Shown: positions 7,553-54,050 of the stretch, in pieces
Position numbering within the stretch: the first letter of the stretch is position 1
Layout: the number at the start of each line of letters is the position of its first letter
Made by a program: the position numbers and the translations under genes
The notes under the pieces: model-generated
What the model was told of the DNA's origin: nothing
Seen by the model: only the letters and a program-made list of their open reading frames with translations
Databases searched by the model: none
DNA from: Polymyxa betae A26-41
Lineage: Eukaryota; Protista; Endomyxa: Phytomyxea
DNA: 64,000 bases
Assembly: GCA_003693705.1 (NCBI GenBank)
Contig: RBZT01000219.1
Coordinates: 57,697 to 121,696, forward strand
Direction: 5' to 3'

Positions 7553-8216
7553 GAAGATGTTATTGATATCATCAGACAGTAACATCAACAAATAGGCGCA
7601 ACTTTTCAGGAATCCTGTTTTGGATAACTCGAATTTGTCGTAAGTCGGAAAAAAATAAAACGATTCCACAGGAGGGTTCAAAGAAATTTTTTGAGCAATA
7701 AGCAAGCTGTCGATGCATGATATCATGTGTGTCTGTATGTCAAAAGATTGCATTAAATGACAAGCATGGTATTGTGCTAGTTCAAAACACTGGTTTTCTA
7801 GCGCCATCACATGGCCTGCACTGCTGCAGCAAAATCGTCTATAGATCTTGAAGACCGGTCGTCAACACCAATCGTATATTCGCTGAGTTTACTTTTAATG
7901 GTTGCGATCGCGACACAATGCTGAGAAGTCCAGATTGTCTAAATAACATTCCTTTTGTTCACATTATCGATCATATGTAGTCTGCAAACTCCACAAGTTC
8001 GTTTCGCAGAAATTTGAGCATTTTTATAGGAAAATTGGAGTTTGCGTCCCGTCACGGAAGCTGGTTGCTGAATCACTACATCCGGTTTGTATAGAACCGG
8101 AACTTCAGCATTCGTATTGAGCTGTTGTTTGTAGTAGCAAGCTGTGAGTGACGACTCTCTCCATATTTTGTCATATTCTCATATCAGAATCCAGACGGAG
8201 AGCATATCAGGTGATC

Positions 8217-9292
8217 ATGGAGCCCGCTGTTGCTGTTGGTATCATTGCCAATATTGCCAGCTCGGTCGGTATCGTCTTGTGCAACAAGTTTGTCTGGACA
8301 CGATTCGGTCAGACCATGGTTCTTTCATTGAATTAAGCCGAACCTGAAACCATTATTAGGCTATAACTTTGTCGTGACATTGTCGTTTATGCATTTCCTA
8401 ACCACAGCTCTTACAACACGAATCCTGCTGCGCTTAAAAATGTTCGAGTACAGGCCAGCGCCATTATCTGGCCTGTTGCCGGTCTCAATCGGGACGCTTG
8501 GAAGCGTCATTTTCATGAACTGTATTCTGATACACTTCTCTAAGTCTTGTAAACTGATTATCTTGATAGTGAACTTAGCGAAGAATTCGGTGGGATTCTA
8601 TCAAGTATCAAAGCTGGCATGTATTCCAGCTACATTGGTGCTGCAATATATTCTTCATCGGAAACAGGTCTCGTATGAGACCAAACTGTCCTTATTGGTG
8701 ATTCTATTGGGCGTCGGTATCTCGACTATTGCAGAGATCTCCATTAATGGTGATATCATGATTACTGGCGATATTGCTGAGTCTTCTGACATTGTTTCAT
8801 ACAGCTCTGGGATTGACGTTCGCCACAATCGCGGTCCTATTCACAGCTCAGGGACAGATCTTCACGAACACATCACAGCAGCAGATGGGTCTCGATTCTA
8901 TGCAGCTTCTCTACCATACTAGCCCTCAGATTGCACTCGGCATGTTCGTCTGCATCTTTTTGTTCGAGGATATTGTCTCCATTGTTGAATTCGAATATTC
9001 ATCCGCTCTTGTGTCACTAGTTCTATTAACGTGTGCATTAGCCGTTCTAGTGAATATTTCCAATTATCTGGTGATTGGGAAGACATCACCAATCACATAT
9101 CAAGTCGTGGGCCATTCCAAGACCTGCTTAGTACTGATTTTGGGCTTCATTATCTTCCAGCAGCCGGTGACCTGGAGGTCTGTCATGGGAATCGCCACGG
9201 CCATGGCTGGTGTCATCTGGTACGGCGAGATCAAACGTGGCGAGTCGAAAAAGCCAGCTTTGCCTCAATACACGTCGGTCCCCAAAGAATAA
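8217..9292 (+). CDS. Nucleotide-sugar/triose-phosphate transporter family (SLC35E3/UXT-like)
   Basis: NIASSVGIVLCNK, NSVGFYQVSKLACIP, VIGKTSPITYQVVGHSKT; multiple TM helices. Confidence 0.9.
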
Positions 9293-9307: not shown

Positions 9308-10000
9308 TTATTTCATGGCGTCGAGGATCTCTTTGACAGCGTCCTCTGGTAGAACGACGCGTGATTTCACGAACAAATTCTGCTCGGGGAGCTCAATCCC
9401 ATACTTTCGCGCCAATGGCGTCCAGATACGCTGACGAACGTTGATGAACCTGTACGGCCGATAAATGGCAGTGTAATACCATTGAGATGACTAACCAGTT
9501 ACTGACTTGACGAACGGTCATGTGACTTTCTTTCGCTAATGCTTCTTTCTCTTCGTTGGTAGGATATGGCCTCGACATATGATCCAGGAACCATTGCTTC
9601 AGACGTTGTCGATCAGGTTGCATTGTTGCTGGTTGCTGTTGTGCCTCTTCTTCTGGCTGCTGCTGATCCTCTAACGCCACCTGTTCGCGAGTAAGTGGTA
9701 TATGGATTAAGATAGATACAAACATACTCCTTGGATAGTTTCGTTATAATCAGCAGAAATCCGCCCGAGCCTATAGATGGCGGTCTCAACAAGTGAGTTC
9801 AGTAACGGCGCTGGAACATCTCTTTGAAGACGTTTCACGATTTCGTCAGCGAACGTTTGGTATTCTTTTACATTCTTTTGCAATATTTCATTAATATGTG
9901 GACTGGCAGATGACAATGTCGCCTATCAAATGAGATTTAGGCAATTTGCAATACGAGCGTCAATTGTTACCTTATCAGAATGTCGCCTTGGCAGTGTCAT
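9308..10000 (-). CDS. TALE-class homeodomain transcription factor (5' end uncertain)
   Basis: LKQWFLDHMSRPYPTNEEKEALAKESHMTVRQVSNW/intron/FINVRQRIW: PYP loop and WFIN motif. Confidence 0.85.
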
Positions 10001-10547: not shown

Positions 10548-13127
10548 TCACGTTGCAGAACTAGATATTGCTAATAGTTTCAGCTTGAAAAGCGGATGTA
10601 GTTGCCCCTTCTCAGCGCCAAATAAGTACCATTCCTTGCTGTTTGTTATTGTCAGATAAACTGATCGCAATAGTGAAATTCCGATTACCCATCTTTGCTA
10701 AGGTGGGAATCGTAGTCTGATTTTGGAGGAACCATTTGCCAGAAATCTTGAAACTGGTATGATTTACCTAAAAGAATCCTGAGGTGACAAACCCGTTGAT
10801 AAATCCTGATTGAGTTACCCGGGATACATTCGACCATAATCACATCAAATATTCTCAACGTCTGTTGCGGTCCGGATGATTGATTTATATCTGTCATACT
10901 CAGAGACGATGAAGCCGAGATTGTAGGTGTTGGTTCCTGATCTTCGTCGTCAAGCGAATCAATGGAGACGTTTGGCAATAAATGCTGCAATGATCTGACA
11001 CAGGTTTTGGAGATGTAAACACTGTAAGTTTGGTTTTAAGATTGCACGTGTTTGTAAAGAGCATTGATCAAAAACATTACCCTTTCTTGGGATCTCCATA
11101 CCAGCGATCTTTTTCATTATTCGGGTTATTCTTGTGAAGTGATGGATAAATCCCGTTGATGCATGCAGTATCGACGAATTTTGCATCTGTTGTATAAAAT
11201 CCAATACGAACCCTTTTGTCGTCGCCGTTACGATCAGATCGACTGAAAAAATTTCTCTTCCATTTCAGCCATCGATCATCGATATGTTTCGTATACACCT
11301 AGATAATTTAGTTCAAGAACGACAAGAGTCAATGCTGCATACTCGGTGAATAGACAGGACCTGTGTTAATGATTAAGGTAAGACGTTATTAATCAATGTA
11401 AAAAGAACAACCTGAACCGAATCAAAGGCAGGCGCATTTCCCATATGGCGTAAAAGAATAGATTTGCAGTGGATGTAATCGTCATGGTCTGGTTGCAACT
11501 CAGTAATTACACGTACATCTGATTGCTTGAACGTCTCCAAGGCTAGAGCTGCATTAGAAGGGTTATGACGTCCAAGATTGTTGTGTACCGTCCTCAGTTG
11601 AAAGTTCAAGAATAGCTGAAGCAATGCGACGTCTTGTATCAGATCGATTTATATGCAACAGCTGGATAAGCTCCTGTCAGTAAACAATAAGTAAGGGTTT
11701 TCTGAGCCTCATTTCATGCATGCCTCATCTTTCAACTGCAGTAGCTTATGTCCAGTTATTGCACTCTGTTTAACGAGCTGTGCAATGCGCTCGTCAGAGT
11801 GCGTTAGCTGCTTCAGAAAGTTGGCGACAACTTCGACGCTCCAATGGTGTGCACGTCCTCGAAATCTGTCGAATACGAGATAAGAAATTGACTGCATCGA
11901 TGATTCCAGTAAACCTGTCAGGTATTAATCGCTTCCGCTTTCCACCGAATTCAGAGCGATATACGACTTGCTCAGACCGACAATCGGATAGCCATATAGC
12001 ATCGTATACTCGACCATCACAATGATAAAACGTTCCAGGTCCCGATCTTTTGCCACGCTTGTACAGACCAGCATGGCAATCGCCAGGCTCAAATCTATAT
12101 CGGACACCATTGTCGTTTATGATCTGAATGGAGGCCCAGATATACACACCATGACCTTCCTATAGAATATAGTAGGTTACAGACTATATTTGGGATCTTG
12201 GGGTCACCCCATCACCTTAAAACCATTATGCCAATGACCTTCATATCGACATCTATTACTATATATAGCAACGCCATATCCATCTCTTTTATCATTCAGC
12301 CATTCTCCATTGTACTCGTATCCCGACGCCGTCCATTTACCACGGCCATGGCGCCGTCCAGAATGAAAGCTTCCGGCGTATTCGTCACCAGTAGGATACG
12401 TTAAGGTCCCCTGTCCATGAGGCAAGTCTTGATACCATTGGCCATGATACTGAACTCCATTTGGGAACAGTTGACGGCCATTTCCTTGACGAAGCCCTTC
12501 ATACCATTCACCTTCGTAAGTTTGTTTTCGATGAAATAGGCGACCGAACCCGTGGCGTAAACCTTTTCGAAATTGTCCTTTATATTCACTTCCTGATGAA
12601 GAGATAAAATACCCATTTCCATCAGGTAAGCCTTCTTTCCATTTGCCTAAAATGGGAGTATAACAATTCATGTGGTTTTACTTCAATTGAAATGCTCACC
12701 ATCATACTTGGCACCCGATAATGCAAATAATTGACCGTGACCATCGCGCTCCCCAAGCAACCACCAGCCTTTGTAGTAATCGCCATCTGGCCAAATCTGT
12801 AGCCAGAATAAGCAGAAAGAATCAATTGTTTACAATTTATGTTCTCACGTGGATACCGTGTAAAGGTTTGGTATTACTGTTTGGTATCTGATTAGCATCA
12901 TTGAAGTTCCGTATTGGAGTTGACTGCTTTTTTGTCGTATTTGCAAATGGTGCCGGAGGAAGTAGTCTCTTCGAGACAATGTCGTAGGTAAGGTCGTTAT
13001 TAGTACATGCAATACATGCAAATGGCGATATCGATTGTGTCCAGACATCCAAGCACGAATTGGCTAATTCCGAAGATATACACTCAGCAAGATCATGACT
13101 GATCTCTTCGTCGTCATCACCTGACAT
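10548..13127 (-). CDS. MORN-repeat (about 10) + SAM + PARP-fold (ADP-ribosyltransferase-like) protein, multi-exon
   Basis: YxGxW..G..HG repeats 11980-12860; SAM WSVEVVANFL...ITGHKLLQLKDEELIQLLHI...RRRIASAILEL; C-terminal RIGFYTT...CINGI...YGDPKKGVYIS...VECIPGKSY...PPKSDYDSH...KEWYLF...QLHPLFKL. Confidence 0.8.
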
Positions 13128-13176
13128 TGGAACTTGGTCTTTTATTTTGCTTTTGATTTCCTCATTGATAGATATT

Positions 13177-15141
13177 TTATCGATCTAAATGTGTCCTTGA
13201 TATTGATTTGTGATTTACATTTGTACTGTTATCGGATGGCGGAGATATATCATCGAGCTGTATTCTCGAGACTATATCCTTCAAGAGAATTGATGCTTTA
13301 GCGTCTTCGAAGTTAGAATAACCGATCCATTTGGAATACTCAATCTCTTGCAATTTCCAGCGAATAGCATTCAAAGCAGAACTTCGATGCTGATCATGTT
13401 TGATACTTGATATGAATTCAGTACAACTTGCTCGTGCATTAATATCTGAAAAAGTTAAACACTGTAAAATGGTAAAGGGAATCAGATCCATAATGTCTTC
13501 AGTGACGTTCAAGCATTCGTGAAGAACCTTGACAAGTACTAGTTCATCCTCTGCTGAATATGGTGGCGCAATCCACAACCGAACCAAAGCAATATCGGGC
13601 GGCGACGATTGTCGAGCAGCGAATATTTTCAAAATTAGCCTCAAAGCTAAAGGGCGCCTTCTTGAATCATAATGACATAGTGCTTTATAGACACTGGCAG
13701 TGTGGCCAGAATCTGCAAACAGGGGCGATATGCTTTCAACCAGCATATCACATACATCTGGACTGACACAATCCATTCCCAGAACGCTATGAATCAGATC
13801 ATCGACGTCAGGCAGTTTATCAAGAAGTTGATGGAAAATGACAGCAATTAACTTGACAAGAAAGGCAGAATGGGTGCACCCATCGCTGATTTGCCTTAAT
13901 GATGTCATAATGGTTGATATTCCCAACTCCACATTGATCAAACCCCGATGTTCTTCAGCGATGGCATGTAGAAAATTTAATGCTTTCAGATTGCGGATGC
14001 AGGCGTGGACAAAAAAAAATGAACTTAACAGACTCTCGATTAACGGTTGATGTCCCAGAAACTCATGAAGTGAACATAACGAATCTTCAAGGATCTCGTT
14101 TGAAAAAACTTGTTGATGCGTTAGAAGGCTTGTTAAAGTAGAGCCAACAACAGTTAAATCCTCTTTTGTTGAAGAATTCAAAATAAATAAGAATAACTGC
14201 TTATGCTTGGATAAACCGGATAAGAGACAGAATCGAAAGATATCTGTTCGAGCAGGTGTGGGAACCGTCTGGGCTTTAAGCAGCTCTATCAATGCTTCCT
14301 CTTCGATGAGTAGCCTTTGCCTAAGTGCCAATAACAAGCGATATGATTCAACTGTCACATTGAACAGCGAACTGTCCCAAATATTCGTCAGTGAGATAGA
14401 CAGTTTTGACTTGAACGAGTTCGAAGCCTTGTGCTTAGATAGGGCGACAGGATTTAAAAGCATCAAGCGTAGCTCATCATCAATCAGTATGAGTTCAAAA
14501 AAACGTATAGACGGGCTTTGAGCTGATTCGATCATCGGCTGGAGAAAAACGTTGGGAAAACGAGATTTATCAGATGTGATGATCGAGAATAAAACGTCGG
14601 CATCGTTTTCAAGACGACAAAAAAGATCAAGCACGAGAGCTTGGCAATTTGCAGACGAGTCAATGATATTGTCAATTAAAGGCATTAATTCGGAAACTGG
14701 TCGCTGTGTCGAAAGAAAATGTCGACATAACCCAATACGAAATTCGATAGGTGCTCGAGAAAAAATGAGAGCTGGCAATGCCGATACTGCACACGATAAC
14801 GTAGCAATATATTGTTCTCGAACTGAAGCTTTGGCACCTAGGATGGCTTCAGTCAAAAGTGTATCAAACTGTCCAGCTTGAAGTTGTAATAAAAGCTCCA
14901 GCGTAAAGTCGCCTTGTGAGAGCAGATTGGCAACGCATTGGATGACGTGATCTGGTTGATTTTTAAAGAGTTGCTGGGTAAGCCATGGGTAGAGAGTTAA
15001 TAGGGATAGCAAATCGGAGCTGATCGAGCACGTCTGATGCGAAGGATGCTTTCTATGAGATGCAGTAATATGATGTCGGATGAGCTGGAGACCATCGGGC
15101 CTGGTCAGACATTTGGCCCATGGATGAATGTCTGAGGTCAT
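13177..15141 (-). CDS. Single-exon 654-aa Leu-rich alpha-solenoid (ARM/HEAT-like) protein
   Basis: Long intact ORF with amphipathic Leu-rich helices; family not recognised. Confidence 0.7.
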   Translation of the reverse strand: MTSDIHPWAKCLTRPDGLQLIRHHITASHRKHPSHQTCSISSDLLSLLTLYPWLTQQLFKNQPDHVIQCVANLLSQGDFTLELLLQLQAGQFDTLLTEAILGAKASVREQYIATLSCAVSALPALIFSRAPIEFRIGLCRHFLSTQRPVSELMPLIDNIIDSSANCQALVLDLFCRLENDADVLFSIITSDKSRFPNVFLQPMIESAQSPSIRFFELILIDDELRLMLLNPVALSKHKASNSFKSKLSISLTNIWDSSLFNVTVESYRLLLALRQRLLIEEEALIELLKAQTVPTPARTDIFRFCLLSGLSKHKQLFLFILNSSTKEDLTVVGSTLTSLLTHQQVFSNEILEDSLCSLHEFLGHQPLIESLLSSFFFVHACIRNLKALNFLHAIAEEHRGLINVELGISTIMTSLRQISDGCTHSAFLVKLIAVIFHQLLDKLPDVDDLIHSVLGMDCVSPDVCDMLVESISPLFADSGHTASVYKALCHYDSRRRPLALRLILKIFAARQSSPPDIALVRLWIAPPYSAEDELVLVKVLHECLNVTEDIMDLIPFTILQCLTFSDINARASCTEFISSIKHDQHRSSALNAIRWKLQEIEYSKWIGYSNFEDAKASILLKDIVSRIQLDDISPPSDNSTNVNHKSISRTHLDR

Positions 15142-52406: not shown

Positions 52407-54050
52407 TTAAAAATACTCATACGATAATGTATAGTTAAGACGAGGTTGAGCAACCATCTTATGCTGATCATCAAATAACTCAAATCGGATTTTAGCATAA
52501 ACTTGTTGTAGATCAACACTTTCTAGATGACATGTCACATCCAATAATCGATCTTTCTTGTACGACATCATACTCATCACACTTGAACGGCCGATACCTA
52601 ATAGACCAATTCGACCAATAACTTCCCCTTTAAACATCACATTTAAAATATATCCATCGGATGTTGATCGCAGATCTGGAATGTTCATCAAAACATGTTG
52701 CCGCCGTGGTTCTGAACTCATTTGGTTCTTATTCCACGATGTTCCAAAACCGAATGCATTAGTTGTAGCAGTATTCATTGGTATCAAACCCATTGCCGAA
52801 TTACTAGACAATGATGAAGAAGTGGCCGGAACTGAACCAAATGTTCTAGCAGGCGATGATGTGGTAGGTAGTGCCTGTGATGCTTGTGAACCAATAATAG
52901 TATTCGATGTTATCGGTGAAGACCCTGGTGAAGTGGCCAACGTTCCACCAATGGAAATAACAGAAGATGAGGCTGTAGATAGTGCTTGTTCCTGTTGATT
53001 ATTGAATGTGTTCGACATCATTGGTGATCCTGGAGAAGCGGCAGATAACGCACCAATCGTCTTATCAGATGGTGAGGTAAGAGATTGGCCTGGTTGATTA
53101 ATACTGATATTTGACATTGTTAGTGACGATCCTGGGCTTGTAAGTGACATATTAGAAGAAGTCGATACCGGCTGTCCAGATACAGATCCATTCGGTAGAG
53201 AGGACGAAGAAGATGTGTTGGGAAGCTGAATGAGAGGTGGTACTGACGTATTACTGATAGTAGATGATGGTATCCATGCAGATATATCATTAGCGATCTG
53301 TTCACTGGATATAAGACCAACAGCAGTTCTGACATAATCATTAATAAGTGGTGATATCCATGTTGCGTTTCTAGATGGAGATGTCTGCCATAGAAACCAT
53401 ACACGATCAACATTCTTATGATGTGAATAGAAGAGGGGATCATATGATGCATAATCGATATCAGACATATCACCACCTATACATACATGAAGTAGATTAT
53501 GTGCATCTTCTAATGCAGATGAGAATGCTGGCAGATCAGATCTAGATAGAGCCAGATTTTGTCCCAATCTTAAATCTGTAGTTGGGAATTCTCCAGCTAA
53601 AGATCTATTTCTATGTGATGTATGAAACCGAACACCTATTTTTAATGGATTCGCCCATATACGTCCTTCTGAATCTGTATATGTCTCTTCAGTAAATGCC
53701 AATGGAATGGGATCTTGAGCCCAATCCCTAACATATCATTATTAGAACATTGTAGAGCAGTATATGATCATGTACCAGTATGGAATTGTGCAGTTCATGA
53801 TATTCTCCCATTGAGCTAGATGATGTCTATGCCATGGTAAAAACTGTAGATTCCCATGTGGACATAATCCTTGAGGTGCACCATGCTCACCTGCAATCTC
53901 CACATAGCTACCTGCTTCTAATCCATTACGAACACAATCACGATACTGATTCAGTTCAGTTAAAGACAGACTATTGATATTCTGTGATATCGGCAGAGAC
54001 CAGCAGATGTTAACATAGAACAATATAAAGACCGATGATAGCAGCTGCAT
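52407..54050 (-). CDS. Secreted tyrosinase (type-3 copper protein) with S/T/P linker and C-terminal beta domain (1 intron)
   Basis: Signal peptide; CuA EHG...CPHGNLQFLPWHR; IPYWDW; CuB LEDAHNLLH...DPLFYSHHKNVDRVW. Confidence 0.92.

What the first reader, a model, noticed from the sequence alone, without database searches (positions are those of the whole stretch)
10548..13127. Tankyrase-like architecture with MORN repeats: MORN-SAM-PARP-fold protein with TASOR/TEX15-like motifs
Seen: manual splicing joins about 10 MORN repeats, a complete SAM domain and a C-terminal domain reading ITELQPDHDDYIHCKSILLRHM...VQVLSIHRVYTKHIDDRWLKWKRNF...RVRIGFYTTDAKFVDTACINGIYP...WYGDPKKGVYISK...VIMVECIPGKSY...PPKSDYDSHLSKDGKEWYLFGAEKGQLHPLFKL*. 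Established: these motifs occur in the same order as in PARP catalytic domains (LxxxxxEY; IxxIxRV; LFHGT; ICxxGF; YGxGVYF; VxxG; PxxYDS; EYVVF...QxxPxY). GDPxKGVYxS and PxxxxDxHxS most resemble the DUF3715 pseudo-PARP of TASOR/TEX15, animal transposon-silencing factors. Repeat scaffold + SAM + PARP is the tankyrase layout (ANK-SAM-PARP). Inference: this may be a convergent, possibly polymerising ADP-ribosyltransferase scaffold using MORN repeats for substrate or membrane/cytoskeleton recruitment. I do not recognise this architecture, and the ORF track hides it in fragments.
Basis: partly seen in the sequence, partly recalled or inferred. Interest (0 to 1): 0.88.

Follow-up and report, generated by a model that had tools for sequence, protein, structure and literature searches.

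The report
MORN–SAM–pseudo-PARP gene of plasmodiophorids
A plant-root parasite and two relatives share a gene that joins a repeat scaffold, a self-association domain and a PARP-shaped domain in the layout of animal tankyrase, but the PARP domain has lost key NAD-binding residues, so it is probably a non-enzymatic scaffold.

Summary
A 12-exon, 674-aa open gene (13127→10548, minus strand; introns 40–59 nt) encodes about 10 MORN repeats, a SAM domain and a C-terminal PARP-fold domain. The genome matches the Polymyxa betae draft. The same architecture is in one Spongospora subterranea protein (CRZ11348.1) and in a syntenic, probably Plasmodiophora, locus. There a single exon runs MORN→SAM→ART start, and all 5 introns coincide with window introns. 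PARP-fold evidence comes from the orthologues: the Atlas model matches only PARPs (TM 0.53–0.60), and a three-species profile ranks ZAP/PARP13 first (E 0.003). A special link to TASOR/TEX15 is not supported. The active site reads Y-Y-E instead of H-Y-E, with G863→T and Y907→H in all three species, so it is most likely a pseudo-PARP scaffold; the kept glutamate leaves atypical activity open. It is not a tankyrase (no ankyrins, no H-Y-E). I found no relatives outside plasmodiophorids and no description in the literature searched. The scan noted this only on this same stretch, not on other DNA. No RNA reads could be checked.

The parts
12849..13127 (-). Exon 1 (aa 1-93): N-terminal region with a conserved C-x12-CxxC and a Pro-rich motif; no signal peptide or membrane helix
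12700..12796 (-). Exon 2: first MORN repeats
   Evidence: 20/31 identical to P0001
12216..12646 (-). Exon 3: six MORN repeats
   Evidence: Pfam MORN E 2.9e-33
11915..12159 (-). Exon 4: last MORN repeats and conserved linker to SAM
   Evidence: 46/81 identical to P0001
11724..11865 (-). Exon 5: SAM domain, first part
11674..11723 (-). GC-AG intron inside the SAM domain
   Evidence: orthologues run through this junction uninterrupted
11589..11673 (-). Exon 6: SAM domain, last helices (helix 5 starts D-T-R-x-R)
11412..11548 (-). Exon 7: start of the PARP-fold domain (strand, helix)
11343..11360 (-). Exon 8: 18-nt micro-exon (VLSIHR strand)
   Evidence: matching strand in both orthologues
11081..11298 (-). 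Exon 9: PARP-fold motif I (F-Y-T-T; Tyr codon 11196-11194 in place of PARP His) and a long D-loop
10819..11021 (-). Exon 10: motif II Tyr (11017-11015), His at the Y907 position (10984-10982), a variable acidic insert, and the VxMVEC strand
10689..10767 (-). Exon 11: P-x4-D-S-H-x-S-K-D segment
10548..10638 (-). Exon 12: motif III Glu (10634-10632), last strands, stop codon

Best explanation
A single-copy, plasmodiophorid-conserved intracellular scaffold made of MORN repeats, a SAM domain and a PARP-fold domain that probably cannot bind NAD+ productively (pseudo-PARP). Shown: gene structure, domain order and conservation in three species. Well supported: the PARP fold. Inferred: the MORN repeats bind partner proteins or dimerise, the SAM domain binds itself or another SAM protein, and the PARP fold serves as a conserved protein- or RNA-binding surface, as in ZAP, TASOR and LRRC9. 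The tankyrase-like order arose independently by domain shuffling.
For: Open 12-exon model. One-chain orthologue P0001 with MORN and SAM_1 over cut-off plus the C-domain. In L002 one exon holds MORN, SAM and the ART start. PARP fold: all 10 Atlas structure rows are PARPs, TM 0.53-0.60, and the top feature hit is PARP at 0.93; profile hits ZAP E 0.003 then PARP10; weak AlphaFold model still ranks PARPs first. Motif I is F-Y-T-T in all three species, like F-Y-A-T of inactive ZAP; the Y907 position is His in all three. PARP-fold proteins lacking two or more NAD+ contacts are inactive (PMC7532188); ZAP is Y-Y-V (PMC8568172); LRRC9 also has H→Y (PMC7955679). MORN repeats are protein-interaction modules (PMC7725318).
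Against: The motif II Tyr and motif III Glu are kept (Glu seen in two species only), whereas ZAP and LRRC9 lack the Glu. The D-loop and pocket-flanking residues are strongly conserved. Both AlphaFold models were poor (pLDDT 40), so the pocket could not be inspected. HMMER prefers another register for motif II (RWYG against GIYF). No localisation or expression data.
Confidence: 0.62

Rival explanations
1. An active, atypical Y-Y-E ADP-ribosyltransferase, possibly switched on by SAM polymerisation, with MORN repeats recruiting substrates: a convergent tankyrase.
For: Tyr II and Glu III kept; the ART core is as conserved as the MORN region (47-55% against 42-65%); motif I substitutions can be compatible with activity (RhsP2 is R-Y-E, PMC12340436); tankyrase activity depends on its SAM (PMC9688111).
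Against: His and Gly of motif I and the stacking Tyr are all replaced; the nearest sequence match is the inactive ZAP domain; the SAM lacks the helix 5 Gly of the tankyrase polymer interface and tankyrase SAM is not among 40 PDB SAM hits.
Confidence: 0.2
2. The PARP fold binds a small ligand (ADP-ribose, NAD+ or RNA) without transfer, acting as a sensor that couples nucleotide state to scaffold assembly.
For: Conserved pocket-lining aromatic residues and a basic exon 9 (net +6); the TASOR pseudo-PARP binds ssRNA weakly (PMC7532188).
Against: No direct evidence; Tyr-Thr at motif I would crowd the nicotinamide site (inference).
Confidence: 0.12
3. A DUF3715/TASOR/TEX15-family silencing factor.
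For: The G-x-P-x-x-G-V-Y-x-S and P-x4-D-x-H-x-S-K motifs resemble TASOR as I recall it (memory, not tested).
Against: No DUF3715 hit; TASOR absent from PDB profile hits; Z 3.3 against 5.0-5.3 for PARP1/2; Pfam showed no SPOC or PIN domain in P0001.
Confidence: 0.05
4. Two separate genes wrongly joined, or a decayed gene.
For: No RNA reads of this genome could be checked.
Against: One-chain Spongospora protein; MORN, SAM and ART start in one L002 exon; five shared intron positions and phases; open frames in all three species.
Confidence: 0.01

Closest known systems
Tankyrases (TNKS1/2, PARP5a/b; ANK-SAM-PARP)
   Same: Order repeat scaffold, SAM, PARP fold with a short SAM-ART linker.
   Different: MORN instead of ankyrin repeat clusters; Y-Y-E instead of H-Y-E; SAM closer to DGKδ/Polyhomeotic/neurabin SAMs, no helix 5 Gly; tankyrases are reported only from animals and choanoflagellates (PMC9688111).
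ZAP/PARP13 PARP domain
   Same: Best sequence and Foldseek match; Tyr for His at motif I (F-Y-A-T against F-Y-T-T) and loss of the stacking Tyr.
   Different: ZAP has Val at motif III, this protein Glu; ZAP carries CCCH zinc fingers and WWE domains, not MORN or SAM. The match is weak (E 0.003) and does not show orthology.
LRRC9-ART (PMC7955679)
   Same: Repeat protein with a Pfam-invisible ART-like domain and H→Y at motif I; predicted pseudoenzyme.
   Different: LRR repeats flank the ART; no SAM; motif II Tyr and motif III Glu are lost in LRRC9 but kept here. No direct sequence comparison was possible.
TASOR/TEX15 (DUF3715)
   Same: Degenerate PARP fold; recalled motif resemblance around motif II.
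   Different: No profile hit; TASOR has Leu at motif I and SPOC, DomI and PIN domains; TASOR has lost all but one catalytic residue.
UniProt A0A0H5RBE7 / CRZ11348.1 (Spongospora subterranea)
   Same: Direct orthologue with the same architecture.
   Different: Annotated only as SAM domain-containing or hypothetical; the record ends before the last PARP strands.

Membership tests
PARP/ARTD fold | ART fold by structure comparison | tested here: met
   Atlas model of orthologue: 10 of 10 rows PARP, TM 0.53-0.60; own AlphaFold models too poor to be decisive but rank PARPs first
PARP/ARTD fold | Pfam PF00644 over cut-off | tested here: not met
Active PARP | Motif I His-Gly-Ser/Thr | tested here: not met
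   Tyr-Thr-Thr in three species
Active PARP | Motif II Tyr | tested here: inconclusive
   G-V-Y conserved in three species, but HMMER offers another register
Active PARP | Nicotinamide-stacking Tyr (Y907) | tested here: not met
   His at +11 from the motif II Tyr in three species; depends on the motif II register
Active PARP | Motif III Glu | tested here: met
   E-W in the window and L002; position assigned by motif order, P0001 lacks this part
Active PARP | NAD+ binding and transfer | not testable with these tools
   needs biochemistry
Tankyrase | Ankyrin repeat clusters | tested here: not met
   MORN only
Tankyrase | SAM domain directly before the ART domain | tested here: met
Tankyrase | H-Y-E triad | tested here: not met
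   Y-Y-E
Tankyrase | SAM head-to-tail polymer | not testable with these tools
   helix 5 Gly replaced by Asp weighs mildly against
DUF3715 / TASOR / TEX15 | PF12509 match or TASOR structure as nearest neighbour | tested here: not met
   (searches of limited sensitivity)
LRRC9-ART | ART between LRR blocks | tested here: not met
   no LRR
LRRC9-ART | Profile similarity to the LRRC9 ART domain | not tested
   no LRRC9 sequence was available by reference

The most novel reading that the evidence does not exclude
An active Y-Y-E ADP-ribosyltransferase whose SAM domain polymerises and whose MORN repeats recruit substrates: an independently evolved tankyrase analogue in Rhizaria with an undescribed active-site chemistry.
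Probability: 0.13. Interest if true: 0.8.

Novelty: new variant of a known kind. Interest (0 to 1): 0.5.

Why it matters
SAM next to a PARP domain behind a repeat scaffold has been regarded as the tankyrase layout of animals and choanoflagellates. A conserved MORN-based version in Rhizaria shows that the layout arose twice. It also adds a Pfam-invisible ART-like family with an unusual Y-Y-E site, which keeps the catalytic Glu but loses the nicotinamide-anchoring His-Gly, and so gives a natural test of which residues an ART needs. The impact is tempered: more than 100 PARP architectures are already known in eukaryotes (PMC4245714), the family looks restricted to plasmodiophorids, and it is probably a pseudoenzyme in organisms that are hard to manipulate.

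Tried and rejected
The joined window model was never sent to a search or fold tool; it was assembled inside scripts only to test the reading frame. My first exon models failed because two small introns (11914-11866, 11588-11549) were missing. Pfam PARP and DUF3715 searches of the own genome found no candidates, which is uninformative. The search for homologous proteins found nothing for exon 9 and only P0001 for two regions. P0003-P0006 are repeat-rich chance hits. JGI metagenome, viral, prokaryotic and phage scans gave nothing; L003 is a chance match in a TPR-like protein. Both AlphaFold jobs gave pLDDT 40. Septin and haemolysin rows (E above 0.25) were treated as noise. My recollection that RhsP2 has an aromatic residue at motif I was wrong: it is R-Y-E. 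Two papers I wanted (Aravind 2015, Karlberg 2015) were not held, so prior mention of this architecture there is not excluded.

Full report
Source. The window lies in a 27,085,814-base, 1,001-contig eukaryotic assembly. This matches the Polymyxa betae draft (1,001 contigs, 27,085,946 bp; PMC6328671), a plasmodiophorid root parasite. The identification is by assembly statistics and by the nearest protein hit being from Spongospora.

Gene model. On the minus strand, 12 exons from the ATG at 13127 to the stop ending at 10548 give 674 aa with no internal stop. The 11 introns are 40-59 nt and poorer in G+C than the exons; ten are GT-AG and one is GC-AG (11723-11674); exon 8 is 18 nt. P. brassicae introns average 60 bp (PMC4471660). 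Joined translations were used only inside scripts, to test the frame and, for the orthologous locus L002, as a local pairwise target to map window exons.

One gene. Exon 9 against 1.84 billion representatives gave two real relatives. P0001 is Spongospora subterranea CRZ11348.1, 658 aa, with MORN (E 2e-30), SAM_1 (E 1.6e-5) and the C-terminal domain in one chain; from memory this accession comes from the species' transcriptome set (described). It ends before the last PARP strands. P0002 lies on a 61% G+C Logan contig (L002), probably Plasmodiophora (inferred from G+C and shared neighbours such as the TPT transporter). L002 holds the whole gene in six exons and one open frame of about 704 aa. 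Its five introns fall at the positions and phases of window introns 2, 3, 8, 9 and 10, and it reads straight through the other six window junctions. Its third exon alone contains a MORN repeat, the full SAM domain and the start of the ART domain. This removes the two-gene reading. The gene is single-copy in the own genome. No relative was found outside these three species, but these searches have limited reach for divergent eukaryotic proteins.

The C-terminal domain. Pfam and NCBIfam do not recognise it. The Atlas model of P0001 residues 465-658 matches PARP clusters in all ten structure rows (TM 0.53-0.60, 122-143 residues aligned), and the best feature hit is a PARP catalytic cluster at 0.93. 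A three-species profile ranks ZAP/PARP13 first in the PDB (E 0.003) and PARP10 next (E 0.006 with the retained intron removed). My own AlphaFold models were poor (pLDDT 40); even so 49 of the top 50 Foldseek rows were PARP-family (best E 0.01), the top three VIA rows were PARP1/2 (Z 5.0-5.3, a range that can be chance) and nine of ten Atlas rows were PARPs at TM under 0.4. Each line is modest; together they make the PARP fold very likely. TASOR did not appear in any profile search and scored Z 3.3, so the DUF3715 link rests only on recalled motifs.

Active site. Motif I is G-F-Y-T-T in all three species, aligned by HMMER to F-Y-A-T of ZAP and H-G-T of PARP10: His becomes Tyr and Gly becomes Thr. 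Taking G-V-Y as motif II, which the following helix in the model supports, the Tyr is kept, the Ser904 position is Ser or Ala, and the stacking Tyr907 position is His in all three (PARP1 numbering from established knowledge). HMMER prefers another register, with RWYG on GIYF, so this assignment is likely but not proven. Motif III is E-W in the window and in L002. The site is thus Y-Y-E. PARP-fold proteins lacking two or more NAD+ contacts are inactive (PMC7532188); ZAP is Y-Y-V (PMC8568172) and LRRC9 has the same H→Y change (PMC7955679). The kept Glu is unusual among these, and RhsP2 (R-Y-E, PMC12340436) shows that motif I can vary in an active enzyme.

SAM and MORN. The SAM profile's best PDB matches are DGKδ, Polyhomeotic and neurabin; tankyrase SAM is not among the 40 hits. 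Tankyrase polymers make their closest contact at the Gly-containing start of helix 5 (PMC4980433); here that position is Asp in all three species, as in neurabin, which also lacks the Gly. Polymerisation is therefore neither shown nor excluded. MORN repeats act as protein-interaction and dimerisation modules rather than membrane binders (PMC7725318). There is no signal peptide or membrane helix, so nothing suggests a secreted effector.

Mechanism. Most likely (0.62) the protein is an intracellular scaffold: MORN repeats bind partners, SAM self-associates or binds another SAM, and the degenerate PARP fold offers a conserved binding surface. Tankyrase itself can scaffold without catalysis. An active atypical transferase (0.2) and a nucleotide or RNA sensor (0.12) remain open. 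The gene structure and conservation are shown; the fold is well supported; all functional steps are inferred.

Novelty. Two eukaryote-wide PARP surveys and a tankyrase evolution study do not mention MORN (PMC2964712, PMC4245714, PMC9688111), and full-text searches found no MORN+SAM+PARP description. The orthologue is annotated only as SAM domain-containing. It is a new architecture and a new divergent ART-like subfamily, within a superfamily known for many lineage-specific fusions and several pseudoenzymes.

Noticed in passing
window 13128-13176: Only 49 bp separate the stop of the upstream 654-aa gene from this gene's ATG; both orthologues have about 17 more N-terminal residues, so the start or the 5' UTR may overlap the upstream gene.
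   Followed up: partly
window 13177-15141 (-): Intronless 654-aa ORF with no Pfam match and no counterpart in locus L002.
   Followed up: partly
window 12849-13127 (-): Conserved C-x12-CxxC in the N-terminus of all three orthologues, with no Pfam match; possibly a small metal-binding module.
   Followed up: partly
window 9393-9725 (-) and about 8144-9292 (+): Downstream neighbours are a TALE-type homeobox gene (Homeobox_KN E 6e-14) and a TPT-family transporter that is also next to the orthologue in L002.
   Followed up: partly
window 52407-53702 (-): Tyrosinase domain followed by a long Ser-rich linker (Pfam E 5e-17).
   Followed up: no
L002 6001-6519: The database protein P0002 is a gene-caller fragment that retains a 57-nt intron in frame, so the orthologue's ART domain is split in public protein sets.
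   Followed up: yes
elsewhere in G000 (scan notes s1-687577, s1-690548, s1-658988): Other first-stage notes report degenerate PARP-like domains fused to kinesin, zinc fingers or a B-box; my profile did not pick them up, so any relationship is distant.
   Followed up: no
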